IMG/VR virus record: IMGVR_UViG_3300027754_000034
Location: 193,206 to 257,205 of that record
Strand: one strand, 5' to 3'
DNA: 64,000 bases
A model generated the notes under the pieces. That model did no database searches. It was not told the origin of the DNA and saw only the letters and a list, made by a program, of their open reading frames with translations. The translations under genes and the position numbers were made by a program. Positions 14,987 through 36,193 of this stretch are shown here, in pieces (position 1 is the stretch's first letter; the number at the start of each line of letters is the position of its first letter).

Positions 14987-14991
14987 AAAAT

Positions 14992-17531: not shown

Positions 17532-17560
17532 TGTATATGCTTCTTATTAATTGTTCGGTT

Positions 17561-18495: not shown

Positions 18496-18762
18496 ATGAG
18501 TATGTTAAAAATAGATGATTTCAGCTTTGGATTTTCTTCGTCCATAGATGACTTTTATTCGCCACCTAAGTCGATATCGTTAAATACTAATAGAATTAAA
18601 ATATCTAAATCTGCTGATTTAAGTGGGTTTGTGAGAATAGCTTCGGATAGATTGGTTCGAATTTCTCAAAATGACTTTTGGAAACTAGCCAAAGATGAAG
18701 ATACGGGCGAGTTTTTTATAGAACGTTTAACTGATGATATTGATGGTCCGGTAAAGGGATGA
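18496..18762 (+). CDS. Hypothetical virion-region protein
   Basis: 88-aa ORF with RBS, contains VRIAS. Confidence 0.7.
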   Translation: MSMLKIDDFSFGFSSSIDDFYSPPKSISLNTNRIKISKSADLSGFVRIASDRLVRISQNDFWKLAKDEDTGEFFIERLTDDIDGPVKG

Positions 18763-19841
18763 TTATGGATCATAACGAGATCTGCCGCATAGCATCTAAG
18801 ATATCTGCATCCTCAAACGTTAGGACTGCGGGAAAAATAGAATTTATACGAGATCAAGGTCCTCTACGGCGAGATGTTCGGGCGAACGACTTTGAATGGT
18901 CTTCTGACTCTTTAAAAAATTTAGCCAAAATATTATGGGCTGCGCAAAGAGCTCATAGTTATTCGGTGTCTGCTTTAAGATTATTTTCTAAAATGCCTTC
19001 TAGTCAGTTTAGCCCGGATGGGTTGCTGGGCGGAAGGGGTTATATTCAACCTATTAAGGAATTAAGAAAATCTTTATCTCAGGCTTCAGAGGTTTTGTCC
19101 TCATTTACCGATACCCTTTACGATGAAATCAACGCTAGCCATTGGTCTGATTCAGAGACTGAAGATAGTAAAAATTTACTGAAGAATACTGAAGAAGTAA
19201 AAGATAACCCTGAAGCATTCGTCGAAGAGGAATATGAGGCGGAAGGAGAAACGGATTTTCATGAAACTAGTCCTTCGTCTTTAAATCCGTCGCCAGAAGA
19301 TTTTCAGGATGAAATCGAACAACCAGACGAAGAATCTGATGCAGAAGATTCCGGGGGGTTTAGTCAACAAGCTTCGTTTGATCAGTACCCTTCCTTTTTT
19401 AAAAATACGCTTGCAAAGCAAAATGGAAGAGTACTAATGGGTACTAGTTCGTTACCTGTTAGCACTCTTCCTGGTCCCAGAGTGGAACATATCGGGCCTG
19501 GAGAATCAGTATATGGCTGGGTGAATGGTCCCGATGCGGTTCCCTCTGATGATCCCTCCTTAGAGGGATTTATTACTGATCAGCCAATATATGAAGATGT
19601 GTGTGCTGATGGTGTTTCTGGATATGAAAACCCAACAGACGGAGATAATACTTATCTTAAAAAAGCTTCATACTCTTTGTTACCTGGTTCTGAGAATTTG
19701 AAAATAATGCCTTTTTATGATCGTAATCTGACTAAAGCTGATGTAGAATGGCTTATGGCGAACTCAAGACCAGATGTCCCAAAGTTATCTACAGGAGAAG
19801 TTACAGACAGTGACACATCATGGTTATGGAAGGACATTTGA
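18759..19841 (+). CDS. Hypothetical virion-region protein with basic leader and acidic linker
   Basis: N-terminus CRIASKISASSNVRTAG; later QQAS and KKAS. Confidence 0.7.
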   Translation: MIMDHNEICRIASKISASSNVRTAGKIEFIRDQGPLRRDVRANDFEWSSDSLKNLAKILWAAQRAHSYSVSALRLFSKMPSSQFSPDGLLGGRGYIQPIKELRKSLSQASEVLSSFTDTLYDEINASHWSDSETEDSKNLLKNTEEVKDNPEAFVEEEYEAEGETDFHETSPSSLNPSPEDFQDEIEQPDEESDAEDSGGFSQQASFDQYPSFFKNTLAKQNGRVLMGTSSLPVSTLPGPRVEHIGPGESVYGWVNGPDAVPSDDPSLEGFITDQPIYEDVCADGVSGYENPTDGDNTYLKKASYSLLPGSENLKIMPFYDRNLTKADVEWLMANSRPDVPKLSTGEVTDSDTSWLWKDI

Positions 19842-20825
19842 ATGCCTTCTACATTGCCTTCTGAGTCCTGCTTGGATAAGACTGTAGATACTTTCGGTCT
19901 TGGTACTTATGATTACTCTCAATGGGGGTTTGATCATGGCGAGGATAGTAACAAGAAAAAATCAGAAAGAACTCTGCCTGATGATGGGGGACCTTTGGAC
20001 CCTTTTGGACCTGATAGACTATTAAGTTATCCTACTATGATTTCCACTTCCCTCGTGCCTGGGGATTCTAGTAGACCGCCTTCCCAAAAAACTCCCCCTC
20101 CTTCATATTTAGACTCGGTAGTCCATTCAGTTTCTCAATCGAAACTTCCTCCGGAAGATCCTACTGTCGCTAGGTCAGATTATTATGATTATATGACAAC
20201 TAGCACCAAAGTAAATTCTTTTGATGACATGTTTTCTAATAGCGGCGATGATACATATACTAGTTCGGATGAAGATTCATTGCCTTCATTGCCTAAAAAT
20301 GAGCAGGAATTCGATAACAACTTGCAGTCATTGGGTAACTACTGGTCGGGAATGGTGATTCAAGATCAATCTGGACCAGCAGGTTTTCCATCCACTGAAT
20401 TTGAGGATCCTCAAAGATACCAAAAAACTAATGCCTCGGAGAAAAATATGAAAAGAATGGCTACCGATATAGAATTGGTTAGGGGTTTGACAAAGTCCTT
20501 TCTTAAGGACTTTGGGAAATCAGAGTTAACTAGACGTCACGTAATGGCATTCCTACAGAAGAATAACCGTAATATGTATTTTGCGTCTGATGTAATCAGA
20601 TGCTTAAAATTAGACCATGATATTATAGTAAAGGATGTTTTGGACGAATTTCCAGTAAAGAAAGAAGCATCTACAAGCCGATTATCTTCAATACGAGACA
20701 TATTGATTAGTTACGAAGTACCTAATGGGAAAAATCCTGAGGTTGCTTCCGAATGTCGACTAGCTGCTGCTAACATAAGCCATGTGTTGGCTTTATTAGA
20801 AAGATATGGAGTTAAAAATGTCTGA
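19842..20825 (+). CDS. Hypothetical protein, acidic/Pro-rich N-half
   Basis: 327-aa ORF in operon. Confidence 0.7.
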   Translation: MPSTLPSESCLDKTVDTFGLGTYDYSQWGFDHGEDSNKKKSERTLPDDGGPLDPFGPDRLLSYPTMISTSLVPGDSSRPPSQKTPPPSYLDSVVHSVSQSKLPPEDPTVARSDYYDYMTTSTKVNSFDDMFSNSGDDTYTSSDEDSLPSLPKNEQEFDNNLQSLGNYWSGMVIQDQSGPAGFPSTEFEDPQRYQKTNASEKNMKRMATDIELVRGLTKSFLKDFGKSELTRRHVMAFLQKNNRNMYFASDVIRCLKLDHDIIVKDVLDEFPVKKEASTSRLSSIRDILISYEVPNGKNPEVASECRLAAANISHVLALLERYGVKNV

Positions 20826-22728
20826 AAAGAAATTGGATTTTGAAGACGGACTGGGCGACATCGACTCCATACTCCATAATCAAAGTATTTCAGATTTATC
20901 CTGGTTAGCTGTGGATGAAGAGGTATATAGAGCTTCGGAAGCGTTACCTAAGCAAAATCTGGATATGATCCCAGAATTGACTCAAGCATTGACATATTCT
21001 TCTGAAGAAGATATCCCTCACGCGATACCCCTTAAACCCCATGTAATGGTAAATCGGAACCCTTTAGATGCTCACGAAGCTTCTAAACGGGACTTATCTA
21101 CCCCTATTAGAAATAGAGTGGCCAAATATGTGATGGAGGGGATAAATAACTCCGAAATACATAAAAAATTATTATTAGAATATTCTCCTGTAGATATACG
21201 GAATGCTAGTGCATTAATATCAGAGGTATTAAGTGAGTCTGGGTTATTGGGGAATGTTTACATAAATGCAAGCCATTTTCCGAGATGTGCTCAAGAGGAT
21301 GTTAAGGATAGAAAGTTTCTAACAGCTTGCGCTAAAGCGTCTTCATATATCCTTAAGAAGGGTGAATGTAATGGATGCGTAAAGAATATTAATGGTCGAT
21401 GTGCATCTTTAAAAAGAGATCTGGTAGATGAAGTTCCATATGGGTCTAAATTAGCGGCTCATTATGCGCCTCAGCTTGCGGCTGAGAAAAGAGTAGCCAG
21501 TTTCAACGATGATACAAAATCGTGGAAAGAAAAAATGAGGATAGCATTCCTATCTTCGCCTACTACTTCTAATCCTGATGGGGTGAAGCATGTAGCGTAT
21601 CAAGCAAAGTTATCACTTACTCCTGTAAGTGATTCTGAGATCAGTGATTATGTAGATCGGCAAGCGTCATCAAAGCGTAATTTCATACTATCTTCAGATT
21701 ATAGAAAATTCGCCACTAGGATGATGGAAGGATATAACGATATCTCTACCATGCGAAGTGCTAGTAGCTCTGAACTGGATAGTTTATCTAAGGAGTATGG
21801 GCTATTGGGCCATACCTACTTAGATATGGACGTTTTAGGGGGATGTAAAAAAACTCTATTTTTTATAAAAGCCAATAAGCTTTCACCTAAATATATTATA
21901 AGAAGAAATGCATCTTGCGGATTATGTAAGAATCTTCCTGATGGAGGTTGCGCAGAACTGTGTGGGTCTCACAATATTTTGGGTTCAATACCAGAATTTT
22001 CTAGGAATGATCTTATTCATGCCTTAGAATCCGCTCTAAAAACTAATCGCATATCATCTAAGGATATGCAGAATGCGATTTCTAGAGTATCAGCAAATGC
22101 TGATTTCAAGTTCTTGATATCAGCCATTAACCTTCATACGCCAAAGATCCAATCTAACTCCTACTCTAGCACAAAGTATAAGGGATTTTATGGTGGAGAC
22201 TCTGGAAAAATTCAAATAGAGGAAGATGAGGTAAGAAGATTCATATCACACTTGATGAACACTGGATTGAAGGGTACTGATCTAAATAATGCTGTATTGA
22301 GTAGATATGCGAAATCAGATATTTCACACTTAAAATCTTTGGGATCAAGATTAGCTGCTGAAGAAAGTGTTCAGGGCACACATTATATCGACCCTACTGC
22401 ATATTTAGACTATGGTCATGGATGTTCTGAGGGTTCCTCTATTTTTAAAAATAGGAGTCCCAAAAATATAATGGCTAGCGCAAAATGCACCGGATGCACT
22501 TTGCAGCTTTCTTCTGGGTGGTGTTCTAGATATGCCAAGAATCTTATAAGGTCGGTACCGGAGGACGTCCGAGAGGCAGCGAAGAGGGTTTCTTTGCCTA
22601 TCTACAGGGAAGCGGCAGAAAATCCTGTAGAAAAATACGAACTCGCTACAGAGGTTATGGTGGATTTAAATGGATCAAAGGCGAGTCGTCTTCCAATATC
22701 ATTTGATGATTTTGGATTTGATGAGTAG
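20806..22728 (+). CDS. Hypothetical protein with triplicated Cys-rich module
   Basis: Three GxxYxxxxx...C ...CxxC...GxC segments. Confidence 0.72.
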   Translation: MELKMSEKKLDFEDGLGDIDSILHNQSISDLSWLAVDEEVYRASEALPKQNLDMIPELTQALTYSSEEDIPHAIPLKPHVMVNRNPLDAHEASKRDLSTPIRNRVAKYVMEGINNSEIHKKLLLEYSPVDIRNASALISEVLSESGLLGNVYINASHFPRCAQEDVKDRKFLTACAKASSYILKKGECNGCVKNINGRCASLKRDLVDEVPYGSKLAAHYAPQLAAEKRVASFNDDTKSWKEKMRIAFLSSPTTSNPDGVKHVAYQAKLSLTPVSDSEISDYVDRQASSKRNFILSSDYRKFATRMMEGYNDISTMRSASSSELDSLSKEYGLLGHTYLDMDVLGGCKKTLFFIKANKLSPKYIIRRNASCGLCKNLPDGGCAELCGSHNILGSIPEFSRNDLIHALESALKTNRISSKDMQNAISRVSANADFKFLISAINLHTPKIQSNSYSSTKYKGFYGGDSGKIQIEEDEVRRFISHLMNTGLKGTDLNNAVLSRYAKSDISHLKSLGSRLAAEESVQGTHYIDPTAYLDYGHGCSEGSSIFKNRSPKNIMASAKCTGCTLQLSSGWCSRYAKNLIRSVPEDVREAAKRVSLPIYREAAENPVEKYELATEVMVDLNGSKASRLPISFDDFGFDE

Positions 22729-22737
22729 TATAGTTGA

Positions 22738-23316
22738 TTGATGGATAAAGATGACTCTGGTCCCCATAAGGGGAAAATACTAACGTTCCCCTCTGGGGAG
22801 TCCATAAACCCAGATGATTTAGGAGCAGATTACGTTCTGGCTCAAGGAACGCATATAACTACTGCTGAATTAGTAAATCCTCAAGATATTTCTAAAGATT
22901 TTAGAGAAAGAGAAGAATATGTCGCAAAGTCAGAATTATTAGTAAAAGTAAATGAAAAATATTCTGCTGTAGATCTTGTTGAACAAGTAATTAAAGAAAT
23001 TACTGAAGAATTAGCGCATTTAAAATATGAAAGAAGGAAAGCGGCAAAGGAAGGAAAGAACACTGTAAACTACACTATTTCCAGGATATCTTCATTAAGA
23101 CAATTGGCAGATGTCTTAATGAAGAGAATAGAAAATGCAAGAGCAGAGCAGTTAGATCTAAAAAGTCCACGGTTTAGAGAAGTCTTAAAATTATGGATGG
23201 AATTCATCTATGATTCTATGGTAAAGGTCGAGGTCTCTGAACAAGTAATAGACTTGGTATTTAGACAAATAGAAGCAGATATTAAAGACTGGGAACAAAA
23301 AGTCATAAATATATAG
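22738..23316 (+). CDS. Helical protein, possible terminase small subunit
   Basis: Size and position directly upstream of the large terminase; no diagnostic motif. Confidence 0.4.
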   Translation: MMDKDDSGPHKGKILTFPSGESINPDDLGADYVLAQGTHITTAELVNPQDISKDFREREEYVAKSELLVKVNEKYSAVDLVEQVIKEITEELAHLKYERRKAAKEGKNTVNYTISRISSLRQLADVLMKRIENARAEQLDLKSPRFREVLKLWMEFIYDSMVKVEVSEQVIDLVFRQIEADIKDWEQKVINI

Positions 23317-23318
23317 TC

Positions 23319-25256
23319 ATGCCTATCAAAGAAGTTACTTATAAAAGTGCCCTGGTGGGTGAGGTCTCAAGTTTCATAGAGAAAAAGCGTAAGTCCAAAT
23401 CTGGGGGTGAGGATGGTGATGTAGAATTTCTTCCGGTGATAGATTTTATAGAAAAATTTAAACTGTTACCTTATGGTCTTTACCCTGTACAAAAATTGAT
23501 TGTTAAAGCTTATTATAACGTTCCGTTAGATGATAAAAATAAATTAATAAAAATATCGGATAAGTTTAATGAAAGAATAATATATAATTTCACAGAAACT
23601 GAATATCTAAAATATCTTTATGATCAGGGTAGATGCAACATTCAAACACAAGATGGTATAGAAAGAAGAGAACTTTTGTTAGTGGTAGGCCGACGAAGTG
23701 GTAAAAGCGCTTTAAGTGCCATATTTGCGGCGTATGAAATATATAAACTATTAAAGAGAGGTAACCCTCAAGCATACTACGGTATGCCCGGAGGTTCAGA
23801 GATCAGAGTTCTTTGCGTAGCTAATGATAAAGATCAGGCATCTATCGTATATGGGGATGTTCAATCTCACGTAGAATCGGTAGATTACTTTAAAAGTTCC
23901 GTAGCTAATGCTACCCAGACATTCATGAAGTTTAGAACTCAGAATGATAGAGAACGATTTGCAGATTCCAATAAAGCCAGTATAGCGGCGTCCTTTAAAA
24001 GTTCAATAGCAAAAGGTCTTCGTGGTCGCGGTGTCATTTGTGCTATATTGGATGAGATAGCATTCTTTCAAGATACCGGATTTAGTAGTGGAGAACAAAT
24101 TTATAGGGCTTTAACTCCTGCATTAGCTCAATTCTCACCAAGAGACTCGCAGGACAAATTAAAACCTATCGGTCCTTCTGAAGGACGCATGATACTAATA
24201 TCATCGCCTGATGCAAAAGAGGGATTTTTCTATAGATTATATCAGACAGCCATGTCTAACAGCAAAGGCTCGTCTGATATGTTGCTCATTCAAGCTCCGA
24301 CTTGGGAAGTGAATCCCACTTTGGATAGAAGTTATTACGAAAAGGAATATTATAAGAATTCAAAAGCATTCATGACAGAGCACGGGGCTGAGTTTTCAGA
24401 CCGTGTTAGGGGGTGGATTGAAGATTCCAGAGATCTTTTGGAATGCGTGGATCCAAAGTTAAAACCTGTTGCTAAGGGTGTCGCAAGAGAAGTACATTTT
24501 GCTGGAATAGATGTTGGTCTGGTGAACGATGGTACAAGTATTGCCATTACAAAAATAAATAATGGTAAAATAGAGTTAGTTTACCATGAAACATGGTATG
24601 CCAAGAGGAAATGGAGTGATATAAATCCGCATTTAAAGGATCCTCTTACGTCTTATGCTCGCACACTTCAGGATCAAGAGAGAATAAGTATGTCTGAAAT
24701 AGCCTCATGGTTTAAAGCTCTTTCAAACAGATTTTATATTCATAAAGCAATATTCGATCAGTGGAGCGGAATCGTATTTGAACAAGAATTACATAAAAAC
24801 GGATTACGTCAATTTGAAATGAGAAATTTCTTTACTTCTGATTCCTCACAAATGTATCAATCTCTAAAAATGTTCATGTATAATAGGCAGCTTAGTATTT
24901 ATGATTATCCATTACCAGAGTTGGAACCCGGGATGACGACGGGAAGACACTCACCTTTAATTTCTGAATTATTAGAATTACAAGCTACATCAGCAGGTAA
25001 AAATCTTATTTCTGTAGAGGCCCCAAAAGCCCCTGGAAAACACGATGATATGTCCGATGCTTTGGCACGTTCGGTATTATTAGCTTCGGAATATATTAAA
25101 GAAAACCCAGGAATTCTAGATAAGAAGATAATCGGAACCGGTGTAGATCATTTATTGCCGGGTAGAATCCCTACGTATTCATCATTCCACAAATCAAGAA
25201 TGAAATTACATGGTGCAAACACACAAAGAATAGTGCCGAAAAATAGATTGCGTTGA
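23319..25256 (+). CDS. terL: Terminase large subunit
   Basis: Walker A VGRRSGKS, Walker B ILDEIAF, LISSP coupling motif, nuclease AGIDVG and HDDMSDALA. Confidence 0.93.
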   Translation: MPIKEVTYKSALVGEVSSFIEKKRKSKSGGEDGDVEFLPVIDFIEKFKLLPYGLYPVQKLIVKAYYNVPLDDKNKLIKISDKFNERIIYNFTETEYLKYLYDQGRCNIQTQDGIERRELLLVVGRRSGKSALSAIFAAYEIYKLLKRGNPQAYYGMPGGSEIRVLCVANDKDQASIVYGDVQSHVESVDYFKSSVANATQTFMKFRTQNDRERFADSNKASIAASFKSSIAKGLRGRGVICAILDEIAFFQDTGFSSGEQIYRALTPALAQFSPRDSQDKLKPIGPSEGRMILISSPDAKEGFFYRLYQTAMSNSKGSSDMLLIQAPTWEVNPTLDRSYYEKEYYKNSKAFMTEHGAEFSDRVRGWIEDSRDLLECVDPKLKPVAKGVAREVHFAGIDVGLVNDGTSIAITKINNGKIELVYHETWYAKRKWSDINPHLKDPLTSYARTLQDQERISMSEIASWFKALSNRFYIHKAIFDQWSGIVFEQELHKNGLRQFEMRNFFTSDSSQMYQSLKMFMYNRQLSIYDYPLPELEPGMTTGRHSPLISELLELQATSAGKNLISVEAPKAPGKHDDMSDALARSVLLASEYIKENPGILDKKIIGTGVDHLLPGRIPTYSSFHKSRMKLHGANTQRIVPKNRLR

Positions 25257-25279
25257 CCTATTTTTAAAATATAAAAATT

Positions 25280-25525
25280 ATGGATGAGATAGGTGTAAAA
25301 GATACGATAGCATTTAGAATATCAGACCAGATCATGAGTCATATTTATCCTGATCAAAAATTTTCAGAATATGATTTTCTCAATGTATTCCATGTGTTTT
25401 TAAAAAGAGATGGTAACTGGGAGGATTTAATAAATGGTGACCCAAAGCAAATAGAGTTACTCATGGACTCGCTTAAAAGCATGATGAAGATAAAGAATAA
25501 TCCTGAGAAGTATGGTATTGGGTGA
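25280..25525 (+). CDS. Hypothetical protein
   Basis: 81 aa; contains TIAFRIS. Confidence 0.65.
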   Translation: MDEIGVKDTIAFRISDQIMSHIYPDQKFSEYDFLNVFHVFLKRDGNWEDLINGDPKQIELLMDSLKSMMKIKNNPEKYGIG

Positions 25526-25842
25526 ATAACAAGATTAGTCACGATTCACATGTAAATACCATCAATGCCCGCTTTAATGAATTCATATCCAAAAGCGAAA
25601 AAATATCGAGAGAGTTAGAAATGTTATTAAAGGATTTGGAATCGTTTGATCATACCTTCTGTAGGACTTCTTTAGGTAAAGAGCTGAATGTAAAGGGTAA
25701 TCTAAAACTTGATAATTTTAAGAACATTTTAGGGTCTTCTTGCGCTAATATTAAGAAGTTCGCTTTAGGTAAGCGAAAGATTTCGTTGGCTTTTGATAAT
25801 AGGGATGATTTATCCGATTCACGCAAGACAGGGCATTCATGA
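25522..25842 (+). CDS. Hypothetical protein
   Basis: 106 aa, overlapping start and stop with neighbours. Confidence 0.6.
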   Translation: MNNKISHDSHVNTINARFNEFISKSEKISRELEMLLKDLESFDHTFCRTSLGKELNVKGNLKLDNFKNILGSSCANIKKFALGKRKISLAFDNRDDLSDSRKTGHS

Positions 25843-27635: not shown

Positions 27636-27660
27636 AATTCTTCTGAATAGTATATATGGG

Positions 27661-29433
27661 ATGACCATATACAAAACATCGGATAGTTCCCTCTCAGGTT
27701 ATGAGAGGGAAGATAAAGAAGTACGCCGAAATAGTCCCACAGGTCGAAAACCACACAGGAAAAAGAAACATACTACGAGTCGCCGTTCACCACGACCTGA
27801 CCAACGTCGCACAAGGATTCAGGAAAAAGACCCCGATTTAAAGAAGGGTGTGGAGGCAGACCCTGATTTATCATTGAATTATAAGCACTCATCTTTACGA
27901 TCGTTTTCAAGAATAGCTTTCCGTATTTCTATAGGGGCTGTCCCCCCAGAAGTGATGTCTCAGTACTTTTCCTCTATTCCCGTTTTAAAAGATTTCTTAG
28001 TAATATTAAAAGGTATTAGTGAGAAGTTAAAAAATGAATACTTAATATTCCTAGAAAGTAAATATGGATTCTCGGGTTTTAAACAGGTTTATGATGATGT
28101 AAATGATGAACATGGGCCACCGTTAATGGAAATTGGTGATTACCCTGATTCTCAGCGCGAGGAGATTGAAACAATAAACACGGGTGTCTTGAATGAAGTA
28201 AAAAAAGGAAAGTTAGAACAAAAAAAGAAGTATAAGATAACGGATTTTAATAACATAAAAAAACTTTTGAACAAGATATCTAAAGATTATGAATCTTCTA
28301 CACCTATTTTTAAAGCAGGTATTAGAGAGACCATAAAAAGTGCCTTAGAGAAAGAGTATGATTATCCAAAGCCATTCATAGATTTTCATATAGCGAATCC
28401 TGACTCGCTGGAAGACCTATCTCAAAATTTGACCAATTTAGAAAACACCGGGCAGATTAGTATTCCTGATGTTTCGGATAAACAAAAGTTATTAGCATTT
28501 CTCGCTTTAGCTTCGCTTCATAAATCATTAGAAGAAAACCCAGTTAATCCGGATTGGACAAAAATGTCAGCTAAAATACAGGAATTAGTAAATAATGTAG
28601 TCAATGAGTTTGAGTACATGGAGTCTTTAAATATGTTAATGAAACAATATGATGCGAATTCTAAAAGATTAATGGCGGATATTGAAAAAGATATTGAAGA
28701 TGATTTAGATGATGATGATGTAGATGTACAGCTCCCCGAAAATTCAGGTTTATTTAGTTTCTTGCAGAACTGGGAAAAAGAGACAGATGACGTTTTAGAA
28801 GGGTTTGATGAATGGATAGGGGAAGTGAAAGATTTTGAATCTGAATTAAATGATATCTCAAAAGAGATCTCTAAAAATAGACCCCATTTTTGGACAGAGT
28901 TGTCAAAAGCATACTTAAAATACTTTGAGAAAAACCATCCGGAGAAGGTCCCTGCTATTTTAAGGCTGAGCACCGGCTCACAGTCTTCTAATGACAAGAG
29001 TATTTTGAAAATGCGTAAGACAGCTGAATATCATGGTACTAAAATACAGGGAAACCCAGATGGTGTTACCAACACTGGGTGGAAATCTATAGATAAAAGG
29101 TATATTGGTAGTATTCATCACAAGTCAATTCTTGATACTGCTCGTTCCATGCTTAAGGATGGTCCTTGGTTTGAATATTCTTGGCGTGGTGGTAGTGTAG
29201 ATGCTCCTGTGAGAGCTGCTTTAGATATCGCCATAGCTACTGCCGATGAAAGTATATATCAAAGTAAAATAGATGCTCCTACTTATGAGTATTTATTAAA
29301 CAAATTAGCCTCTTGGGAATACGACTTATTTTCTGATACATCATTGAATATGCCTAAATCTCCTAATAAGCGCAAGGCTTCTAACGTCAGTATTTACGAC
29401 GAAATGGTCGAATTCGCTTCATTTATAAAATGA
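27661..29433 (+). CDS. Hypothetical head-region protein
   Basis: Arg-rich N-terminus; segments bounded by KTS, KHS, KTA, RKAS. Confidence 0.7.
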   Translation: MTIYKTSDSSLSGYEREDKEVRRNSPTGRKPHRKKKHTTSRRSPRPDQRRTRIQEKDPDLKKGVEADPDLSLNYKHSSLRSFSRIAFRISIGAVPPEVMSQYFSSIPVLKDFLVILKGISEKLKNEYLIFLESKYGFSGFKQVYDDVNDEHGPPLMEIGDYPDSQREEIETINTGVLNEVKKGKLEQKKKYKITDFNNIKKLLNKISKDYESSTPIFKAGIRETIKSALEKEYDYPKPFIDFHIANPDSLEDLSQNLTNLENTGQISIPDVSDKQKLLAFLALASLHKSLEENPVNPDWTKMSAKIQELVNNVVNEFEYMESLNMLMKQYDANSKRLMADIEKDIEDDLDDDDVDVQLPENSGLFSFLQNWEKETDDVLEGFDEWIGEVKDFESELNDISKEISKNRPHFWTELSKAYLKYFEKNHPEKVPAILRLSTGSQSSNDKSILKMRKTAEYHGTKIQGNPDGVTNTGWKSIDKRYIGSIHHKSILDTARSMLKDGPWFEYSWRGGSVDAPVRAALDIAIATADESIYQSKIDAPTYEYLLNKLASWEYDLFSDTSLNMPKSPNKRKASNVSIYDEMVEFASFIK

Positions 29434-29720
29434 ATTATAAATATCATTATTCAACGGATTATCTACATAAATTAGTGGACCATGAGTACGTAGGACAAGT
29501 AGTAAATGATAAAGATAAGAAACCCCTTTCTATCCTAATAGGAGTATTAGGAGCCATAGAAAAGGGTGGAAAAACAGTTGACTCAGATGAGTCTTCAGTA
29601 GGTATTGCTCAACATTATAGCAGGATTCTTCTGTCACCTCGTAATGTGCTGTTGGAAAACAAAGACTTTAAAAAGATTAGTGAATTGATAAAAAAGTTTA
29701 ATAATAGTCATAAGAAATGA
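29430..29720 (+). CDS. Hypothetical protein
   Basis: 96 aa, ATGA overlap with the upstream gene. Confidence 0.55.
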   Translation: MNYKYHYSTDYLHKLVDHEYVGQVVNDKDKKPLSILIGVLGAIEKGGKTVDSDESSVGIAQHYSRILLSPRNVLLENKDFKKISELIKKFNNSHKK

Positions 29721-29871
29721 AATTCTTATGAATGATTTTGTTTGTGAGCATGCTGTCTTTTTATCAACCCCATCATTCGGGCATGCATTAATGGGAAATT
29801 TAGGTATGATTCTCGAATCAAACTATTCATCTCTCACTGAAACTAGTAAGAGATATAACTAGAGGACTAAG

Positions 29872-30174
29872 ATGTCAGTAGACCACAACCAAAGAATCGC
29901 TGCGGAAATTAAGGAATTAACTCACGTGGCTTATGAGAACCCCGAAGCTCGTGAAGTTCTCTTGCCAATAATTGCAGCTAAGATGAAGATGCTAAAGAAG
30001 CCTAAGGAAGCTCCTAAGAAAGCTCCTAAGAAAGCTTCACCTAAGGAAGCCCCTAAGAAAGTTTCACCCATGGAAGCTCCTAAGAAAGCTCCTAAGAAAG
30101 CTCCCAAGAAAGGTTCACCCAAGAAGAAGCGTAAGGCTTCTGTCGATATCACCCTTTCCGATTCTCGGTGGTGA
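29872..30174 (+). CDS. Basic PKKA-repeat (histone H1-like) protein
   Basis: RBS GAGGA; about 10 PK(K/E)A-type units encoded by 12-bp repeats at 30001-30127. Confidence 0.78.
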   Translation: MSVDHNQRIAAEIKELTHVAYENPEAREVLLPIIAAKMKMLKKPKEAPKKAPKKASPKEAPKKVSPMEAPKKAPKKAPKKGSPKKKRKASVDITLSDSRW

Positions 30175-30219
30175 TATTTACATTTTTCATGCTTTTTTTA
30201 AAGCAGTCTGGAGTAAAAA

Positions 30220-30711
30220 ATGATTCCGAAGAGCGTTGCGAACAAAGTATTGAGTAATTTAGATTCAGCGGCTTCTCGCATTGAGTCCCTAGTGAATGAG
30301 GGAAAAATCGGTGCAAGAGTGGCTTCGACATTAGTGCGTGATTTAGACTCCTTTGCAGACCGTTTCGAGGTGGCTGCATTTGGTAAGGAAAATCTTAGTC
30401 GTCGCATATCTACCCTTATGAAGGGAGATAAGGATGAGGAGCATTACATGAAGTCTTTCGATAATGTGAACGCTCCTTTGAAGGTTCAGGCGGATGAGTC
30501 TTACATGCATGAGTCTGGTGACTCTGCTCGTTGGGATAGTATTCCAACATTTGATCAAGATAACTCTTCAGCGGTCATGAATCGCCCTGAATATGCAGTT
30601 GTAGACCAGAGTAAATGGTCAAACGACGGAAAAAGCGTCGCCCAACCGTCATTAATATCAGGGCCTCTTAAGAAGCATAAAGCTTCAGGTCCTAAGACCT
30701 GGGCTGACTGA
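30220..30711 (+). CDS. Hypothetical head-region protein
   Basis: RBS GGAG; 163 aa. Confidence 0.72.
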   Translation: MIPKSVANKVLSNLDSAASRIESLVNEGKIGARVASTLVRDLDSFADRFEVAAFGKENLSRRISTLMKGDKDEEHYMKSFDNVNAPLKVQADESYMHESGDSARWDSIPTFDQDNSSAVMNRPEYAVVDQSKWSNDGKSVAQPSLISGPLKKHKASGPKTWAD

Positions 30712-30737
30712 TCTTTCGTCATGCTTACAGGTATAAG

Positions 30738-31442
30738 ATGAACACGAGATTCGCCTTCGTAGATGAAGTATTATATTCCAAGGAATTTAATACTGGTGAT
30801 TGTGTACGCAAGACTGGACTTCGTGATTTCGTTTTAACTCCGTATGCCGGGCGTGTGCTTTATAGTGATACTGATACCGGGGTGGTAGTTGTTCAGTGGC
30901 CTTGGGGAGCCGAGAACAACTATCCCTCGGAATTGGTAATCGATAAATCGGGTGATTTTGGGACTCCGAACATGGATCAGTCTTATTCTACTTGGGAATC
31001 CACTAGATATAAAGATGATCCCGATACATTAAAGAATGATGTAAAGTGGCGAAAAAGTTTAGCTTCTGATATTTCTGAGGAATTTAGTCGATTAACCCTT
31101 CCAATATACAAATCTGCTTGTAAGGCTTGGTATCAAGAGTTACCAGAAATGGAAGTTCTGGTAACTCTCTCTAGTATTTATTCACCGAAATATGGTTTTG
31201 AACCAGTACGAAAATCAGTAGATGATGTGTATAGTTCTGGTCGTCGGATCGCTATTTATTGGGGAAGCAGTAATAGAAAGTATAGAGTAACTCAATCAGA
31301 GATGGTAACTGGGAAGTACAAATGTCCTCGTTGTGGTAATGGTCTAAAGCCTAGAACCTTCAGACATTTAAAAAGATTAATGTCATGTGGAGGACCTTCA
31401 GGATGTGGTTTTTCAATACATAATAAGGATTTATTAAAATGA
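30738..31442 (+). CDS. Hypothetical protein with C-terminal Zn ribbon
   Basis: KCPRCG...MSCGGPSGCG. Confidence 0.72.
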   Translation: MNTRFAFVDEVLYSKEFNTGDCVRKTGLRDFVLTPYAGRVLYSDTDTGVVVVQWPWGAENNYPSELVIDKSGDFGTPNMDQSYSTWESTRYKDDPDTLKNDVKWRKSLASDISEEFSRLTLPIYKSACKAWYQELPEMEVLVTLSSIYSPKYGFEPVRKSVDDVYSSGRRIAIYWGSSNRKYRVTQSEMVTGKYKCPRCGNGLKPRTFRHLKRLMSCGGPSGCGFSIHNKDLLK

Positions 31443-32491
31443 ATTCAATCTCCAAGATTCTAAAAATTAGTGGCTCTATTTCGAATACTCGCTTTAATGG
31501 CTTGAGATTGTCTGATGACTCGTCTTATTGGGGGACTCAGAAAACAAACGGGTTCTTTTACTCGTCTTTAGGGTATCTTGTAACTGAGGCTAAAGACGTA
31601 CTCATAGATTTAAAAAATAAGATTCGAAAGTTATTGTCTGATTCTAAAAATGCTAGAGAATTTGCTGAATCCTTAGATAAGGAAAAGGGAAAAAAGATAA
31701 TCGATTTAGAGTCGATACTTAAGGCTCACAAGTTGTGGGAGGATAAGTTAAAGAAACAAGCTTCTTCTCGCCTAGCCATTTTTGGGCTTAAAAGTCCATT
31801 ACAAACAATTCTTGATACAAAAGATGATGCTCTTGATACGCCACCAAGTGTAATCGAGCAGCAGTTTAAGTATAATAAGAAATTTTTTAACTTGGTTAAA
31901 AAGATTCAAGATGAATATGAAGTATTAATACAGAATCCTTCAGAAGATTCAGAAGATAATGCAGAAAAGCTGCTTCGGGATATAGATGAAGCGTTAGACA
32001 TGTCATCAGGAATCCTATCTAAAATTTACCATGAACCGTCGTCCAAGGCTGTTCCTAAAAAGCCTCTTCCACCCAAACGGAAGCCTGAATATACAGAATT
32101 AACGGATGAACAATTAGAATTTATAGAGCCGGAGCAGGAATATGCGGAAGTAACTGATGGACAGTTACAATTTGTAAAGGATCCACCTCAAACAAAGTTT
32201 AAAAGTCGTCGTAATATAAATCGTGACAAAAAGGAAGAAGAAAAAGCCATAAAGAATCTTCCTGAAATGCGTTCTTATTTTGCAAGGTTACTGAGAATGA
32301 AACCAGAATCTGCGGCATATAAGAGTTCGCTTAAGAAGTTATTTAGTCTGTTAAAAGATAACTTTGGCGAAGAAGCAGATTTGAATACTGTCTTAACGGC
32401 ATCGTCTCACATATCATCATTAATACGTGATAATCAGAGAGTGAGAAATGATGTAGTGGTTTATTTATCAACTTTATGGGGAACTTTATAA
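31439..32491 (+). CDS. Hypothetical helical protein
   Basis: 350 aa; internal 18-aa duplication EY(T/A)E(L/V)TD(E/G)QL(E/Q)F. Confidence 0.68.
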   Translation: MNSISKILKISGSISNTRFNGLRLSDDSSYWGTQKTNGFFYSSLGYLVTEAKDVLIDLKNKIRKLLSDSKNAREFAESLDKEKGKKIIDLESILKAHKLWEDKLKKQASSRLAIFGLKSPLQTILDTKDDALDTPPSVIEQQFKYNKKFFNLVKKIQDEYEVLIQNPSEDSEDNAEKLLRDIDEALDMSSGILSKIYHEPSSKAVPKKPLPPKRKPEYTELTDEQLEFIEPEQEYAEVTDGQLQFVKDPPQTKFKSRRNINRDKKEEEKAIKNLPEMRSYFARLLRMKPESAAYKSSLKKLFSLLKDNFGEEADLNTVLTASSHISSLIRDNQRVRNDVVVYLSTLWGTL

Positions 32492-32521
32492 TTTCTATAA
32501 ATTTTATAGTTAAGGAATTTT

Positions 32522-34033
32522 ATGCCTCGTAAGCATTATGCAAATGCAATAATTTCTCGACAAAACGTTCCATTTGATGAGTGGATGGACGTATTGAGAG
32601 GACAGAACGAGGGGGCTGTTCCTAAGGATCATATTAATCGGGTAGCAAAAACCGTCTTGCGGAAGTGCGACCCGAATCAGTATTTATTATCCCATTCCAC
32701 TATAGTAGCATCTGTTGATACGATTGAACCCAAGGGAACCAAGACCGGACGGTTAATGAACCGTGGAGTACAGATCGATGTTAGATATCCGGATTTTAGG
32801 ATAAAGTCCGGTTGTTTACCGATAATTAACAATAATGGAGACGCTTGGTCTCGTTCATTGTTACTTTCTTCTTATCGTACATTTATAGGTTCTCCGAATT
32901 ACTTAGAACATGTCCAGATACCTGAATTATCGAAAGGTTTCATAGTTGATGCTGTGGCCCGTGACTTGGGCGACTCTTGTTATGTCGACATTCTAGTGGC
33001 AACGGACCGAAAGCACGGTCAACTGGTAAATGATATTCTTACCGGGGACATTACTGGAATGTCAATGGGCTGTATTAGTCTATTTACTATATGTACTAAG
33101 TGTGGAAATGTTGCTTCAGACGATTCTCAGTTATGTCCTTGCATACAATATGAGGGTAAGCATACCGAATTTATTGATGAACAAGGTAATAAACAGAAAA
33201 TTGCAGAATTAATTGGGCATGTAATGGTGCCAAACAGTAACCAATTTATTGAAGCAAGTTGGGTGAAGAATCCAGCTTTTACTGGTGCCGTAAGAAGAAA
33301 TTTCTTAAATCAAAATATGATTCAAACAGCAGCAAAGATCAATGACGCTGCTGAAGTTTATGAAATCAAGCGATCTATGCCTGATTTAGATGGTATGAAG
33401 AGAGCTGCTTTTACTTATAGAAAATCGGATGATGACGAGACACAGGATATCGGAGACGGTCAGGAGCCTTCTCAATCACAGAATGGTCCTTCCTCAGATT
33501 CCGAACGACCGGTCAAGAGTGACCAGCTGAATTCTCTTATTGATAAAGTTCAGGAGCAACTCCTGAGCTTAATAATGGAGAATCTCTCTGATCGGCTAAA
33601 ACCGAAGCCTGAGGATGTGGGAACCGTAGTTTCTGCTCCAGTAGATCTAACTGCCGGAAACGATAATATCATTCATAGTTCGGCAGATTTCGAGCGCCAT
33701 GTAAAGCGCAAATTCGCTAGTTCTACATCATTAGCGGACTGGGCAATTAAAACCCATAAGATTGTTCATGAAGGAGGAGTTAAATCTATAAAAGCGGCAC
33801 GTCTAAAACCGCAAGATTTAATAATCCTTTCATGGGTTGTTGATAATGTTAATGGCAGGAGATACGCTTCTGACCTTTATCAATTGTCAATTAAAATTGG
33901 GCCTTTGAGCAACTATCCAAACGAGATATCCTTTTTAACAGCGTGTTCTATCAAATTTGGTCGCGATTTAACGGCCAAAGAGGAGAGATTCTTAGTCTGG
34001 AAGGGTAAAATCGCGAGTATTGCGTGCTTTTAG
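32522..34033 (+). CDS. Prohead (capsid maturation) protease with Zn-finger insertion
   Basis: NYLEH, GFIVDAV, ITGMSMGC...CTKCGN...CPCI, FIEASWVKNPAFTGA. Lies between portal and scaffold/MCP. Confidence 0.75.
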   Translation: MPRKHYANAIISRQNVPFDEWMDVLRGQNEGAVPKDHINRVAKTVLRKCDPNQYLLSHSTIVASVDTIEPKGTKTGRLMNRGVQIDVRYPDFRIKSGCLPIINNNGDAWSRSLLLSSYRTFIGSPNYLEHVQIPELSKGFIVDAVARDLGDSCYVDILVATDRKHGQLVNDILTGDITGMSMGCISLFTICTKCGNVASDDSQLCPCIQYEGKHTEFIDEQGNKQKIAELIGHVMVPNSNQFIEASWVKNPAFTGAVRRNFLNQNMIQTAAKINDAAEVYEIKRSMPDLDGMKRAAFTYRKSDDDETQDIGDGQEPSQSQNGPSSDSERPVKSDQLNSLIDKVQEQLLSLIMENLSDRLKPKPEDVGTVVSAPVDLTAGNDNIIHSSADFERHVKRKFASSTSLADWAIKTHKIVHEGGVKSIKAARLKPQDLIILSWVVDNVNGRRYASDLYQLSIKIGPLSNYPNEISFLTACSIKFGRDLTAKEERFLVWKGKIASIACF

Positions 34034-34073
34034 GGCCTTGATAAGTTATTGATTAACAGGAGACAGATTTAAT

Positions 34074-35309
34074 ATGCGTACACGTACCACCTGGCAGGGC
34101 AAGGGAAGCGAAACCGCGCGTCAGGCGACAACGGTCCGCCGTGCGGATATCTATGACATGAACTTTGGAGGACCACGTCCCCAACCTGCTCCGGACCAAT
34201 ATATGGCTCCGGATGCAGGTCCAGATAAGTGGGCGGAGACTCCAGCGTCATATGACCGTATTTCTGAAGAGTATGATTCAAAGGGTCATGTTCTTCGCAA
34301 CGAAAACGGTATGGCGGAGTTCCGGAAAAATACTTTTGATCGTCCTTCATGGGGTGACGAGAAGAAATATGACAACCGTACAGCTTCAGAACGCAAGGCA
34401 GTTGCCGCTCACAGACTTGCTTCATATTTATTAAAGACAACTGACCGTGGCCTTGTTCGCAAGGTCGCTCTCGGATTCATGTCAATGCCCGATGCAGCTG
34501 TTAGTACAGCTCTTCGTGCAGTTGATCAGATTTCTCCCAAGTCTCTCCCAGATGAATCTCGGTTCAAGCGTGCCTTTGCTTGTACTAAGTTAGCAGCTGG
34601 AATGCTTGGCGATGGTTCTACAGAGGAGTCAGTCGAACGTCTCGCTCGTTCGATCTACGAGGTCGACGACCCTACTCTTCGTTCCATTGTGAAGTCTGTT
34701 GCTATGGCGAAGATCGCCCAGCAGCAAGAGGAAGAGGAAGAGGAAGAGGAAGAGGAAGAGGAAGAGGAAGAGAAAGATGCCTCTTCTATGAAGCCTGAGC
34801 ATCCTGCTAAGCAAGCTCAGGAAGAGGAAGAGAAAGATGCCTCTTCTATGAAGCCTGAGCATCCTGCTAAGCAAGCTCAGGAAGAGGAAGAGGAAGAGGA
34901 CTCCTGTGGTTCTGATTCCATGATGGGTGGCATGCATGCTCAGGCAGAAGAGGAAGAGGAAGAGGAAGAGGAGGATGAATCCGGCGTCCCAGTTGATGTC
35001 CAGATTATGCTCGAGCAAATGAAGCTTCCTGCCATGAGCGGTCTTCCTGCCATGTCAGAGTCTCCTGCAGCTCCTGCAGCTCCTGCAGCTCCTGCAGCTC
35101 CTGCAGCTTCGGTTGCAGCTTCTTTAGAGGCTCTTTTTTCTGATGATCCTGAGGTTCAGGCTCACCGCGAAATCATGGCAGCTTCAAACCCTGGCTTTAA
35201 GTCAGGACGAGTTGCCTCGACCAGTGGTGCTAAGAAGCTCGGTAAAGTCCAAGCTTCCGATCAGAAGAACGCAACTTCTTCTTTAGAAGCATTGTGGGAT
35301 CGTTCCTGA
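34074..35309 (+). CDS. Capsid scaffolding protein
   Basis: RBS AGGAG; poly-Glu tracts, PAA repeats, C-terminal anchor LEALWDRS; directly upstream of decoration and MCP genes. Confidence 0.72.
   Translation: MRTRTTWQGKGSETARQATTVRRADIYDMNFGGPRPQPAPDQYMAPDAGPDKWAETPASYDRISEEYDSKGHVLRNENGMAEFRKNTFDRPSWGDEKKYDNRTASERKAVAAHRLASYLLKTTDRGLVRKVALGFMSMPDAAVSTALRAVDQISPKSLPDESRFKRAFACTKLAAGMLGDGSTEESVERLARSIYEVDDPTLRSIVKSVAMAKIAQQQEEEEEEEEEEEEEEEKDASSMKPEHPAKQAQEEEEKDASSMKPEHPAKQAQEEEEEEDSCGSDSMMGGMHAQAEEEEEEEEEDESGVPVDVQIMLEQMKLPAMSGLPAMSESPAAPAAPAAPAAPAASVAASLEALFSDDPEVQAHREIMAASNPGFKSGRVASTSGAKKLGKVQASDQKNATSSLEALWDRS
34727..35108 (+). repeat. (GAGGAA)n tracts, a 60-bp tandem duplication (about 34761-34890) and a 9-bp x4 repeat (about 35063-35108)
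   Basis: agaaagatgcctcttctatg recurs at 34771 and 34831; cctgcagct occurs four times. Confidence 0.9.
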
Positions 35310-35320
35310 AATAAAATTTT

Positions 35321-35358
35321 AACCCCAGATGGAGACTAAGGTTTTCATCTGGGGTTTT
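35321..35358 (+). terminator. Rho-independent terminator-like hairpin
   Basis: aaccccagatg...catctggggtt followed by T residues, after the scaffold stop. Confidence 0.7.
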
Positions 35359-36166: not shown

Positions 36167-36193
36167 GCCTAGGACAGAGAAAGGACTATTATT

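What the first reader, a model, noticed from the sequence alone, without database searches (positions are those of the whole stretch)
18496..35309. Recurrent K/R-x-A(S) motifs punctuate head-region proteins: a candidate prohead-protease cleavage code
Seen: RIAS, RTAG, QQAS, KKAS, RMAT, KEAS, RVAS, RQAS, RVAA, KTAE, RKAS, KQAS, RTAS, KIAQ and KQAQ occur at boundaries between compositionally distinct segments in the 18496-34074 proteins. In the scaffold they directly precede poly-Glu blocks. Known: T4 gp21 and phiKZ gp175 cleave many head proteins at short motifs, but after Glu. Inferred: this phage's Zn-finger protease processes polyprotein-like internal proteins at a basic-x-Ala site.
Basis: inference. 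Interest (0 to 1): 0.65.

Follow-up and report, generated by a model that had tools for sequence, protein, structure and literature searches.

The report
Jumbo-phage head protease cleavage motif
The head-assembly proteins of this 257-kb phage and its relatives (including Bacillus phage G) are studded, far beyond chance, with a short Arg/Lys-x-Ala-Ser motif. It is most likely the cutting signal of the phage's own capsid-maturation protease and resembles the Ala-Ser signal of herpesviruses, not the Glu signal of T4 and phiKZ.

Summary
All 15 listed tetrapeptides are present. The core motif [KR]-x-A-S occurs 24 times in the 17 head-module ORFs (18496-35309) against 4.6 expected (z about 9). The other 278 ORFs of the 257-kb genome show no excess (44 against 39.6). 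An unbiased scan of 8000 gapped tripeptides ranks R.AS first after poly-Glu. The excess recurs upstream of the capsid gene in Bacillus phage G, Tunturiibacter phage Tunturi_5, huge phage LR745208 and 39 IMG/VR loci.

Sites keep their positions: about 30 residues before the scaffold C-terminus (22/22 orthologs), at the end of the protease catalytic domain (Ala invariant), in the protease tail and in the portal N-terminus. Arg/Lys and Ala are fixed there and the next residue varies, as expected for cleavage after Ala.

The protease has the herpesvirus-assemblin / T4 gp21 fold plus an inserted Cys-rich zinc-ribbon-like motif. T4- and phiKZ-type Glu motifs are not enriched.

Cleavage itself, the exact bond and the virion location of the substrates are inferred, not shown. 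The claim that sites mark compositional boundaries fails a test. I read it as a new specificity variant of a known mechanism.

The parts
32522..34033 (+). Capsid-maturation (prohead) protease, 503 aa. It has a catalytic domain of about res 50-285 (fold match res 50-264), an acidic low-complexity linker, and a helical C-terminal domain (res 387-503).
   Evidence: phrog_18299 head maturation protease, E 3.8e-11. AF2 model res 50-264 matches VZV protease at Z 11.8, PrV protease at Z 11.2 and T4 gp21 at Z 9.8. Invariant H58, NNNGD 103-107, E129-H130, S181-M-G-C184, C191, C194, C205 in 22 orthologs. No Pfam family.
33398..33412 (+). Candidate site at the end of the protease domain: KRAAF, res 293-297 (release-site-like). 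Relatives mostly have KKAAS here.
   Evidence: Ala296 is invariant in 22 orthologs and the next residue varies (F, G, S, H, T, Q, Y). [KR].AS is at this column in 19/31 orthologs. It lies at the start of the low-confidence linker 288-333.
33710..34018 (+). Three [KR]xAS sites in the protease C-terminal part: KFAS res 397 (nt 33710-33721), RYAS res 447 (nt 33860-33871), KIAS res 496 (nt 34007-34018).
   Evidence: The extreme C-terminal site is present in 19/31 orthologs. Post-catalytic parts of the orthologs hold 60 sites against 7.2 expected.
34074..35309 (+). Scaffold-like protein, 411 aa, with poly-Glu blocks and five [KR]xAS sites: RTAS102, RLAS114, KDAS234, KDAS254, RVAS379. It also has KIAQ213 and KQAQ246/266.
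   Evidence: It lies between the protease and capsid genes. Five sites against 0.66 expected, p 6e-4. Site coordinates.
35208..35219 (+). Scaffold C-terminal site RVAS (res 379-382), 30 residues (Thr383-Ser411, counting Ser382 as the first) from the C-terminus if the cut is after Ala381; maturation-site-like.
   Evidence: R379, A381 and S382 are invariant in 20 orthologs. [KR].AS is at this column in 22/22. It is followed by the conserved tail GAKKLG...LW[DE]RP.
25977..25988 (+). Portal N-terminal candidate site RVAA (res 47-50) in the portal gene 25839-27635.
   Evidence: 'QSIR[VLM]A' is conserved across orthologs, with the next residue A, S, T, H or M. RVAS is at this column in 8/26. The phage G portal has RKMAS at res 55.
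20806..22728 (+). 640-aa orphan protein with six [KR]xAS sites, all in the N-terminal 369 residues (res 132, 198, 229, 285, 317, 367). Candidate multiply-cut head protein.
   Evidence: Six sites against 0.78 expected, the lowest per-protein p of all 295 ORFs. The LR745208 homolog also has six. No family or Atlas match.
18496..20825 (+). Three orphan ORFs (88, 360 and 327 aa) carrying RIAS47, RIAS10, KKAS301 and KEAS274, plus the variants RTAG, QQAS and RMAT.
   Evidence: No family hits.
27661..32491 (+). Orphan ORFs between portal and protease that carry sites. 27661-29433: KLAS548, RKAS571 (19 aa from the end). 29872-30174: KKAS53, RKAS87 (13 aa from the end). 30220-30711: RVAS33, plus HKAS153 near the end. 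31439-32491: KQAS106.
   Evidence: The 27661-ORF C-terminal site is present in 7/10 orthologs and the 30220-ORF N-terminal site in 6/15, with [KR]xA in nearly all.
36194..37081 (+). Major capsid protein (HK97 fold family), 295 aa, without any site. It is the shell in which the protease would act.
   Evidence: phrog_2522 E 2.7e-46. 38% identical to phage G gp27, 45% to Tunturi_5, 77% to LR745208. 0.1 sites per ortholog.
23319..25256 (+). It serves as an internal negative control.
   Evidence: phrog_2 E 2.6e-25. No sites in the window; 0.3 per ortholog.

Best explanation
[Arg/Lys]-x-Ala followed preferentially by Ser is the substrate recognition code of this phage's own assemblin-fold capsid-maturation protease (32522-34033).

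Proposed mechanism, inside the assembled prohead:
- The protease frees itself by cutting at the end of its catalytic domain (KRAAF, res 293-297) and in its C-terminal tail.
- It cuts the scaffold about 30 residues before its C-terminus, detaching it from a conserved, presumably capsid-binding, tail. It also chops the scaffold at four or more further sites so the pieces can leave.
- It trims about 49 residues from the portal N-terminus.
- It processes several orphan proteins encoded around the terminase and portal genes.

The bond cut is most likely the one after Ala (P3 = Arg/Lys, P2 free, P1 = Ala, P1' = Ser > Ala > others). That is the same P3-x-P1 layout as T4 (Leu/Ile-x-Glu), phiKZ/SPN3US (Ala-x-Glu) and herpesviruses (Val/Leu-x-Ala|Ser).

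Shown: the motif, its confinement to the head module, its conservation, and the protease fold.
Inferred: cleavage itself, the bond, and the fate of the fragments.
For: 1. Enrichment is specific to the head module. 24 sites against 4.6 (z 9.2), while the rest of the genome has 44 against 39.6. It survives local shuffles. The three most enriched of all 295 ORFs are the 20806 ORF, the scaffold and the protease.
2. Unbiased discovery. R.AS is the top gapped tripeptide that is not low-complexity, both in the window and in the pooled relatives (219/54).
3. Replication in distant relatives, upstream of the capsid gene against the capsid gene and downstream: phage G 13/3.2 against 3/1.6; Tunturi_5 13/4.1 against 2/2.5; LR745208 21/5.0 against 6/3.2; IMG/VR loci 268/75 against 34/19. 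Arg/Lys at P3, Ala at P1 and Ser after it are favoured in all three clade groups.
4. Positional conservation at classic protease targets.
5. At conserved sites Arg/Lys and Ala are fixed while the next residue drifts: portal A/S/T/H/M, protease domain end S/F/G/H/T/Q/Y.
6. The enzyme is of the right kind: fold Z 11.8 and 11.2 to herpesvirus proteases and 9.8 to T4 gp21; PHROG head maturation protease.
7. The hosts of the relatives belong to different phyla (Bacillota for phage G, Acidobacteriota for Tunturi_5). The conserved agent is therefore phage-encoded.
8. Synonymous codon variation at the sites shows peptide-level selection.
9. Herpesvirus release and maturation sites are YLQA-T and VQA-S in pseudorabies virus, with the same logic of freeing the protease and removing the capsid-binding C-terminal tail of the scaffold (PMC4498786).
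Against: - There is no direct evidence of cleavage. No virion N-terminal or semi-tryptic data exist for any member in the papers I could read. The phage G structure and mass-spectrometry paper was not held.
- The protease-scaffold co-fold gave no verdict.
- The scaffold C-terminal site lies in a generally conserved segment, so its 22/22 conservation is less telling than it looks.
- Some sites lie inside predicted helices or Cys motifs (KIAS496, RCAS198, RNAS367) and may not be accessible.
- The IMG/VR loci are related to one another, so the pooled counts are not independent events.
- A more divergent protease clade (L035-L042) mostly lacks [KR]xAS in its own tail and has other residues after Ala.
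- None of the substrate proteins is shown to be in the virion.
Confidence: 0.7

Rival explanations
1. The motif is recognised by the same prohead protease, but the bond cut is not Ala|Ser. It could be after the Arg/Lys (trypsin-like) or after the Ser.
For: No tool result fixes the bond. HK97 matures its capsid protein after a Lys (my own knowledge, not tested here). Basic residues are the most enriched flank (Arg 8.5-fold).
Against: Ala two residues downstream of the basic residue is obligatory (no other P1 residue is enriched) and invariant at conserved sites, while the residue after Ala drifts. Every characterised assemblin-fold protease quoted here reads P3-x-P1 and cuts after the third residue.
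Confidence: 0.15
2. The motif is a conserved non-proteolytic signal. It could be a docking or targeting motif for incorporation into the prohead, or a basophilic Ser-kinase site of the Arg-x-x-Ser type.
For: Arg-x-x-Ser resembles kinase consensus sites (general knowledge). Several sites lie close to protein termini, where targeting peptides often sit: 12 of 24 are within 57 residues of an end.
Against: [KR]..S as such is not enriched (75 against 73), so the signal depends on Ala. At conserved sites Ser is replaceable while Ala is not, which is the opposite of a phospho-acceptor. Up to six sites per protein, and an absence from the protease's catalytic domain against a crowded tail, fit chopping better than docking.
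Confidence: 0.08
3. The sites are cut by another protease, either a host enzyme or a second phage enzyme such as the ClpP-like protein reported in phage G virions.
For: Phage G encodes ClpP/ClpX, and these were detected in particles (PMC12484599).
Against: The motif is shared by phages of hosts from different phyla. It co-occurs everywhere with the assemblin-fold protease, which itself carries the sites at its domain end and tail. No ClpP-like gene was seen in the window's head module.
Confidence: 0.04
4. The pattern is a statistical or compositional artefact, caused by low-complexity Lys/Ala/Ser-rich segments, tandem repeats or a shared paralogous domain.
For: One KKAS lies in a PKKAPKK repeat, and the two KDAS sites lie in a duplicated scaffold segment.
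Against: Removing those three leaves 21 against 4.6. Block shuffles keep z above 8. The flanks of the sites are unrelated to one another. The same excess appears in phage G and Tunturi_5, where the proteins are not detectably homologous by BLAST.
Confidence: 0.03

Closest known systems
Herpesvirus assemblin (e.g. HSV/PrV pUL26, HCMV UL80a) with its release (R) and maturation (M) sites
   Same: - The protease fold is the same (Z 11.8 to VZV and 11.2 to PrV protease).
- Ala is at the predicted P1 with Ser preferred after it, as in PrV YLQA-T and VQA-S.
- One site sits at the end of the catalytic domain.
- One site sits a few tens of residues before the scaffold C-terminus, upstream of a conserved tail.
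   Different: - P3 is basic (Arg/Lys), not Val/Leu/Ile. [VLI].AS is only weakly enriched (12/6.4).
- Protease and scaffold are separate genes here, although the protease has its own long C-terminal extension.
- The catalytic domain carries an inserted Cys-rich zinc-ribbon-like motif.
- Many more substrates are predicted.
- There is no sequence-level homology.
T4 gp21, phiKZ gp175 and SPN3US gp245 prohead proteases
   Same: - Same fold (T4 gp21 Z 9.8).
- Same layout of a three-residue code with a free middle position and a cut after the third residue.
- Many head proteins, the portal and the protease itself are processed, and propeptides hold several sites (PMC10052503).
- SPN3US also prefers Ser after the cut.
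   Different: Those enzymes cut after Glu (Leu/Ile-x-Glu, Ser/Ala/Gly-x-Glu, Ala-x-Glu). Such motifs are not enriched here (z -1.2 and -0.9). Here the key residues are Arg/Lys and Ala.
Bacillus phage G (Donellivirus) head module: gp14 portal, gp19 protease, gp26 decoration, gp27 capsid protein
   Same: The capsid protein (38% identity), portal and protease are homologous. The same [KR]xAS excess lies upstream of the capsid gene (13 against 3.2), including two sites in the C-terminal 50 residues of gp19 and one at res 55 of the portal.
   Different: The phage G genome is twice as large. Lys rather than Arg dominates P3. The other substrate proteins (gp4, gp7, gp11, gp12) are not detectably homologous to those of the window. 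No cleavage motif for phage G appears in the papers I could read.

Membership tests
Assemblin-fold capsid-maturation serine proteases (herpesvirus assemblin / T4 gp21 / HK97 gp4 superfamily) | Characteristic beta-barrel fold of the catalytic domain | tested here: met
   AF2 model (pLDDT 85-93 over res 50-260). VIA-align gives Z 11.8 to VZV protease (rmsd 2.6, 114 aligned), 11.2 to PrV and 9.8 to T4 gp21, with 58 chains at Z 8 or more, the listed ones being herpesvirus proteases and T4 gp21. Foldseek alone is weak (best E 5.7e-3, T4 gp21).
Assemblin-fold capsid-maturation serine proteases (herpesvirus assemblin / T4 gp21 / HK97 gp4 superfamily) | Catalytic His followed by catalytic Ser, plus a third His/Asp/Glu, all conserved | tested here: inconclusive
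   H58, H130, S181, D200 and E229 are invariant in 22 orthologs, in the right order. I had no residue-level superposition to assign the triad. Inteins in relatives are inserted right after 'SMG' of SMGC181-184 and before LEH128-130, which hints that these motifs are functionally central.
Assemblin-fold capsid-maturation serine proteases (herpesvirus assemblin / T4 gp21 / HK97 gp4 superfamily) | Gene lies in the head module between the portal and the scaffold/capsid genes | tested here: met
   Order is terminase 23319, portal 25839, protease 32522, scaffold 34074, capsid protein 36194. Phage G, Tunturi_5 and LR745208 have the same order.
Assemblin-fold capsid-maturation serine proteases (herpesvirus assemblin / T4 gp21 / HK97 gp4 superfamily) | Sequence membership in a curated family (Pfam S21, S77, S78 and the like) | tested here: not met
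   No Pfam hit even at E up to 1, apart from a weak zinc-ribbon match. No PDB sequence hit with the profile. Only PHROG 18299 and 2774 match.
Herpesvirus-type cleavage code (Val/Leu-x-Ala|Ser; R-site and M-site) | Ala at P1 and Ser at P1' | tested here: inconclusive
   The sequence pattern is met: Ala is obligatory and Ser is enriched 5-fold. The cut itself cannot be observed with these tools.
Herpesvirus-type cleavage code (Val/Leu-x-Ala|Ser; R-site and M-site) | Hydrophobic P3 (Val/Leu/Ile) | tested here: not met
   P3 is Arg (8.5-fold) or Lys (3.2-fold). Ile is a minor third choice, and Val and Leu are not enriched.
Herpesvirus-type cleavage code (Val/Leu-x-Ala|Ser; R-site and M-site) | A site near the scaffold C-terminus that removes a capsid-binding tail | tested here: inconclusive
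   The site is 30 residues from the end in 22/22 orthologs, followed by the conserved GAKKLG...LWDRP tail. Binding of the tail to the capsid protein was not tested.
Herpesvirus-type cleavage code (Val/Leu-x-Ala|Ser; R-site and M-site) | Protease translated in frame with the scaffold | tested here: not met
   Separate ORFs 32522-34033 and 34074-35309. The protease has its own 200-residue extension that carries sites.
T4 / phiKZ-type cleavage code (x-x-Glu|) | Enrichment of Leu/Ile-x-Glu or Ser/Ala/Gly-x-Glu in head proteins | tested here: not met
   [LI].E 50 against 58.0 (z -1.2). [SAG].E 81 against 88.3 (z -0.9). A.E 35 against 27.8 (z 1.5).

The most novel reading that the evidence does not exclude
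A whole clade of jumbo and mega phages (phage G, Tunturi_5, LR745208 and dozens of uncultured relatives) matures its capsids with a herpesvirus-like code. It cuts after Ala, usually before Ser, and has a release-like site at the end of the protease domain and a maturation-like site that removes a conserved C-terminal capsid-binding tail of the scaffold. This would be the first tailed-phage protease with Ala|Ser specificity. It would suggest that the Ala|Ser code and the R/M-site logic are either ancestral to Caudoviricetes and Herpesvirales or arose twice on the same fold. In addition, short Trp-containing C-terminal tails downstream of the last site (scaffold, ORFs 29872, 30220, 18759, 31439) would act as removable capsid-targeting peptides.
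Probability: 0.4. Interest if true: 0.72.

Novelty: new variant of a known kind. Interest (0 to 1): 0.6.

Why it matters
Prohead proteases decide which proteins stay in a phage head and in what form, yet a cleavage code is known for only a few lineages (T4, phiKZ/SPN3US, HK97, herpesviruses).

A sequence-readable code for the phage-G lineage would let anyone predict the mature ends of head, scaffold, portal and internal proteins in hundreds of uncultured huge phages. It would also tell structural and proteomic studies of phage G what to look for. The published phage G searches read here allowed only fully tryptic peptides, so they could not have seen these ends.

The resemblance to the herpesvirus Ala-Ser sites adds a functional link between tailed phages and herpesviruses, on top of the shared fold.

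Tried and rejected
- Co-folding of the protease catalytic domain (res 40-300) with the scaffold C-terminus (res 345-411) gave no verdict (score 0.01). It counts neither for nor against.
- ESM Atlas look-ups of the 20806 and 27661 proteins gave no usable hit and poor models. PHROG and Pfam scans left 11 of the 17 head-module ORFs unnamed or not scanned.
- A profile search of the protease against PDB sequences found only noise.
- The claim that sites mark compositional boundaries was tested by Jensen-Shannon divergence and by charge difference, and is not supported. Closeness of sites to protein termini is suggestive only (12 of 24 within 57 residues).
- Gordonia phages Pupper and Skog (capsid protein 28-30% identical, 1082-aa protease fusion) show no clear [KR]xAS excess. 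They mark the limit of the clade and were not used as support.
- Literature searches turned up no described Arg/Lys-x-Ala-Ser phage motif. The phage G cryo-EM and mass-spectrometry paper (PMC7316594) is not held, and the 2025 phage G paper has no supplements held. I therefore cannot exclude that cleavage data exist there.
- I did not use the big protein searches, the look-up of sequencing runs or read laying, because no claim needed them.

Full report
**Context.** The window is the last 64 kb of a single 257,205-bp contig. Bases 18496-37081 hold a co-directional head module:
- four orphan ORFs;
- a possible small terminase (not established);
- large terminase (23319-25256);
- portal (25839-27635);
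- six orphan ORFs;
- a head maturation protease (32522-34033);
- a poly-Glu scaffold-like protein (34074-35309);
- a small protein (35516-36166);
- an HK97-type major capsid protein (36194-37081).

The capsid protein is 77% identical to that of the uncultured huge phage LR745208, 45% to Tunturiibacter phage Tunturi_5 and 38% to Bacillus phage G gp27. The genome therefore belongs to the phage-G-like lineage of jumbo phages.

**Checking the observation.** I called 295 non-overlapping ORFs on the whole genome and counted motifs against within-protein shuffles.
- In the 17 head ORFs (5484 aa), [KR].AS occurs 24 times against 4.6 +/- 2.1 (z 9.2) and [KR].A 85 times against 46.8 (z 6.4).
- In the other 278 ORFs, [KR].AS occurs 44 times against 39.6.
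- Shuffling only within 20-50-residue blocks, which keeps local composition, leaves z at 8.2-8.9.
- Changing one position at a time shows Ala is the only enriched residue before Ser. Arg (8.5-fold) and Lys (3.2-fold) are the enriched residues two places before Ala. Ser (5.2-fold) is the main residue after Ala, followed by Ala, Gln and Phe.
- Among all 8000 patterns of the form a.bc, R.AS ranks second after E.EE, which comes from the poly-Glu blocks.
- The three most enriched proteins of the whole genome are the 20806 ORF (6 sites), the scaffold (5) and the protease (3).
- Codons at the sites are diverse, so this is a peptide motif and not a DNA motif.
The remark about poly-Glu blocks holds for KIAQ and KQAQ.

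**Replication elsewhere.** The table gives [KR].AS counts as observed / expected from composition.

| Phage or set | Upstream of capsid gene | Capsid gene and downstream |
|---|---|---|
| Phage G | 13 / 3.2 | 3 / 1.6 |
| Tunturi_5 | 13 / 4.1 | 2 / 2.5 |
| LR745208 | 21 / 5.0 | 6 / 3.2 |
| IMG/VR loci | 268 / 75 | 34 / 19 |

- The IMG/VR set is 39 loci found with the protease, whose proteases are 36-84% identical to the window's. Together they carry 377 sites against 120 expected on the coding strand. The row above is restricted to the loci where a capsid gene could be located.
- R.AS is again the top pattern that is not low-complexity in these loci.
- The same residue preferences hold in three separate groups of relatives. 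Lys dominates in phage G and Tunturi_5, Arg in the window's own clade.
- Two Gordonia phages with a more distant capsid protein show no clear excess. The code therefore belongs to a bounded clade.

**Where the sites are.** Alignments of orthologs show four kinds of conserved site.
1. *Scaffold C-terminus.* A site 30 residues before the C-terminus is present in 22 of 22 orthologs (R379, A381 and S382 invariant). Conserved GAKKLG...LW[DE]RP tail follows it.
2. *End of the protease catalytic domain.* Ala296 is invariant here. The residue two before it is Lys/Arg and the residue after it varies (Ser in most, Phe in the window).
3. *Protease tail.* Further sites lie in the linker and at the extreme C-terminus. 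Summed over 31 orthologs, the catalytic part holds 7 sites against 7.5 expected and the rest holds 60 against 7.2.
4. *Portal N-terminus.* 'QSIR[VLM]A' is conserved and the next residue is A, S, T, H or M. Phage G has RKMAS at the equivalent place.

The capsid protein, the small protein upstream of it and the terminase carry essentially none. A fixed Arg/Lys-x-Ala with a drifting following residue is what one expects if Ala is the P1 residue.

**The enzyme.**
- The 503-aa protein matches PHROG 18299 (head maturation protease) and no Pfam family.
- An AlphaFold model built from 22 orthologs has a confident domain at residues 50-264. This domain aligns with herpesvirus proteases (VZV Z 11.8, PrV Z 11.2) and T4 gp21 (Z 9.8).
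- Invariant residues include H58, H130, S181 in SMGC, and the Cys set 191/194/205 with Cys or His at 207.
- In several relatives, inteins interrupt the gene right after SMG or before LEH. This is typical of insertion at functionally central motifs.
- I could not assign the catalytic triad residue by residue.

**Mechanism proposed.** By analogy with all characterised enzymes of this fold, the code reads P3-x-P1 with the cut after P1. The characterised codes are T4 Leu/Ile-x-Glu, SPN3US Ala-x-Glu with Ser preferred after the cut (PMC10052503), and pseudorabies virus YLQA-T and VQA-S (PMC4498786). Here that gives Arg/Lys-x-Ala | Ser.
- The protease would release itself at KRAAF (res 293-297) and trim its tail.
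- It would detach the scaffold from its C-terminal tail and chop the scaffold into pieces.
- It would trim the portal.
- It would process the orphan proteins. The 20806 ORF, for example, would lose its N-terminal 369 residues in seven pieces.

T4-type and phiKZ-type Glu motifs are not enriched.

**What is not shown.**
- No experiment or data set available to me shows cleavage.
- The co-fold of the protease domain with the scaffold tail gave no verdict.
- The substrate proteins have no known relatives, and their presence in the virion is assumed from gene position.
- Pooled counts over related loci are not independent.
- Some individual sites may be buried.
- The phage G mass-spectrometry paper could not be read. 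I found no published description of the motif but cannot rule one out.

**Verdict.**
I put 0.7 on these being sites of the phage's own prohead protease. Given that, I put about 0.8 on the cut being after Ala.
- It is a new specificity variant of a well-known mechanism. It is notable for its herpesvirus-like Ala-Ser core and for covering the whole phage-G lineage.

Noticed in passing
L022:8396-11194, L024:8348-11074 (also L026, L027, L030, L031); portals L014:104-6391, L029:1328-5740: Inteins (Hint plus LAGLIDADG domains) interrupt the protease genes of several relatives, right after 'SMG' of the invariant SMGC motif or just before 'LEH'. The portal genes of other relatives carry inteins too. 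The window's own protease and portal have none.
   Followed up: partly
window ORF ends: 19841, 30174, 30711, 32491, 35309: Five of the 17 head ORFs have Trp within their last five residues, against 18 of 278 elsewhere (Fisher p 0.006, a post hoc test). The scaffold tail LW[DE]RP and the 30220-ORF tail K[TN]WA are conserved in orthologs, and both lie downstream of a last [KR]xAS or HKAS site. They may be removable capsid-targeting tails.
   Followed up: partly
window 34000-38000 and 14000-18000: GC is 0.47-0.49 over the scaffold and capsid genes and 0.44-0.47 over 14-18 kb, against about 0.36 elsewhere. The capsid protein is 91% identical (median) to its IMG/VR relatives, while the protease (46%) and scaffold (43%) of the same loci are far more diverged.
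   Followed up: no
window 37846-38688 (+) and 37186-37833 (+): Just downstream of the capsid gene lie a Mom-like / HNH endonuclease-like protein (phrog_1384 E 7e-24, phrog_559 E 7e-18) and a Cys-rich zinc-finger-like protein. The first may be a homing element next to the highly conserved capsid gene.
   Followed up: no
window 20806-22728 (+): The six-site orphan protein holds three similar Cys motifs (CxxC followed 8-10 residues later by C) at about res 187-199, 371-382 and 559-571. Two of the [KR]xAS sites (RCAS198, RNAS367) touch them.
   Followed up: no
genome outside the head module (G000 contig, e.g. 47-80 kb) and window 14992-17463: The rest of the genome is rich in G.TG, TGP and PV.P repeats (G.TG 145 against 31 expected), which suggests collagen-like or fibre repeats. 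The 823-aa protein at 14992-17463 matches head-decoration and Ig-like virion protein PHROGs.
   Followed up: no
L043:11040-14288 and L044:11023-14271 (Gordonia phages Pupper, Skog): The homologous protease in these phages is an N-terminal domain of a 1082-aa protein, a herpesvirus-like protease-plus-long-extension architecture. In Skog it is annotated as 'LysM-like endolysin', which looks like a mis-annotation.
   Followed up: no
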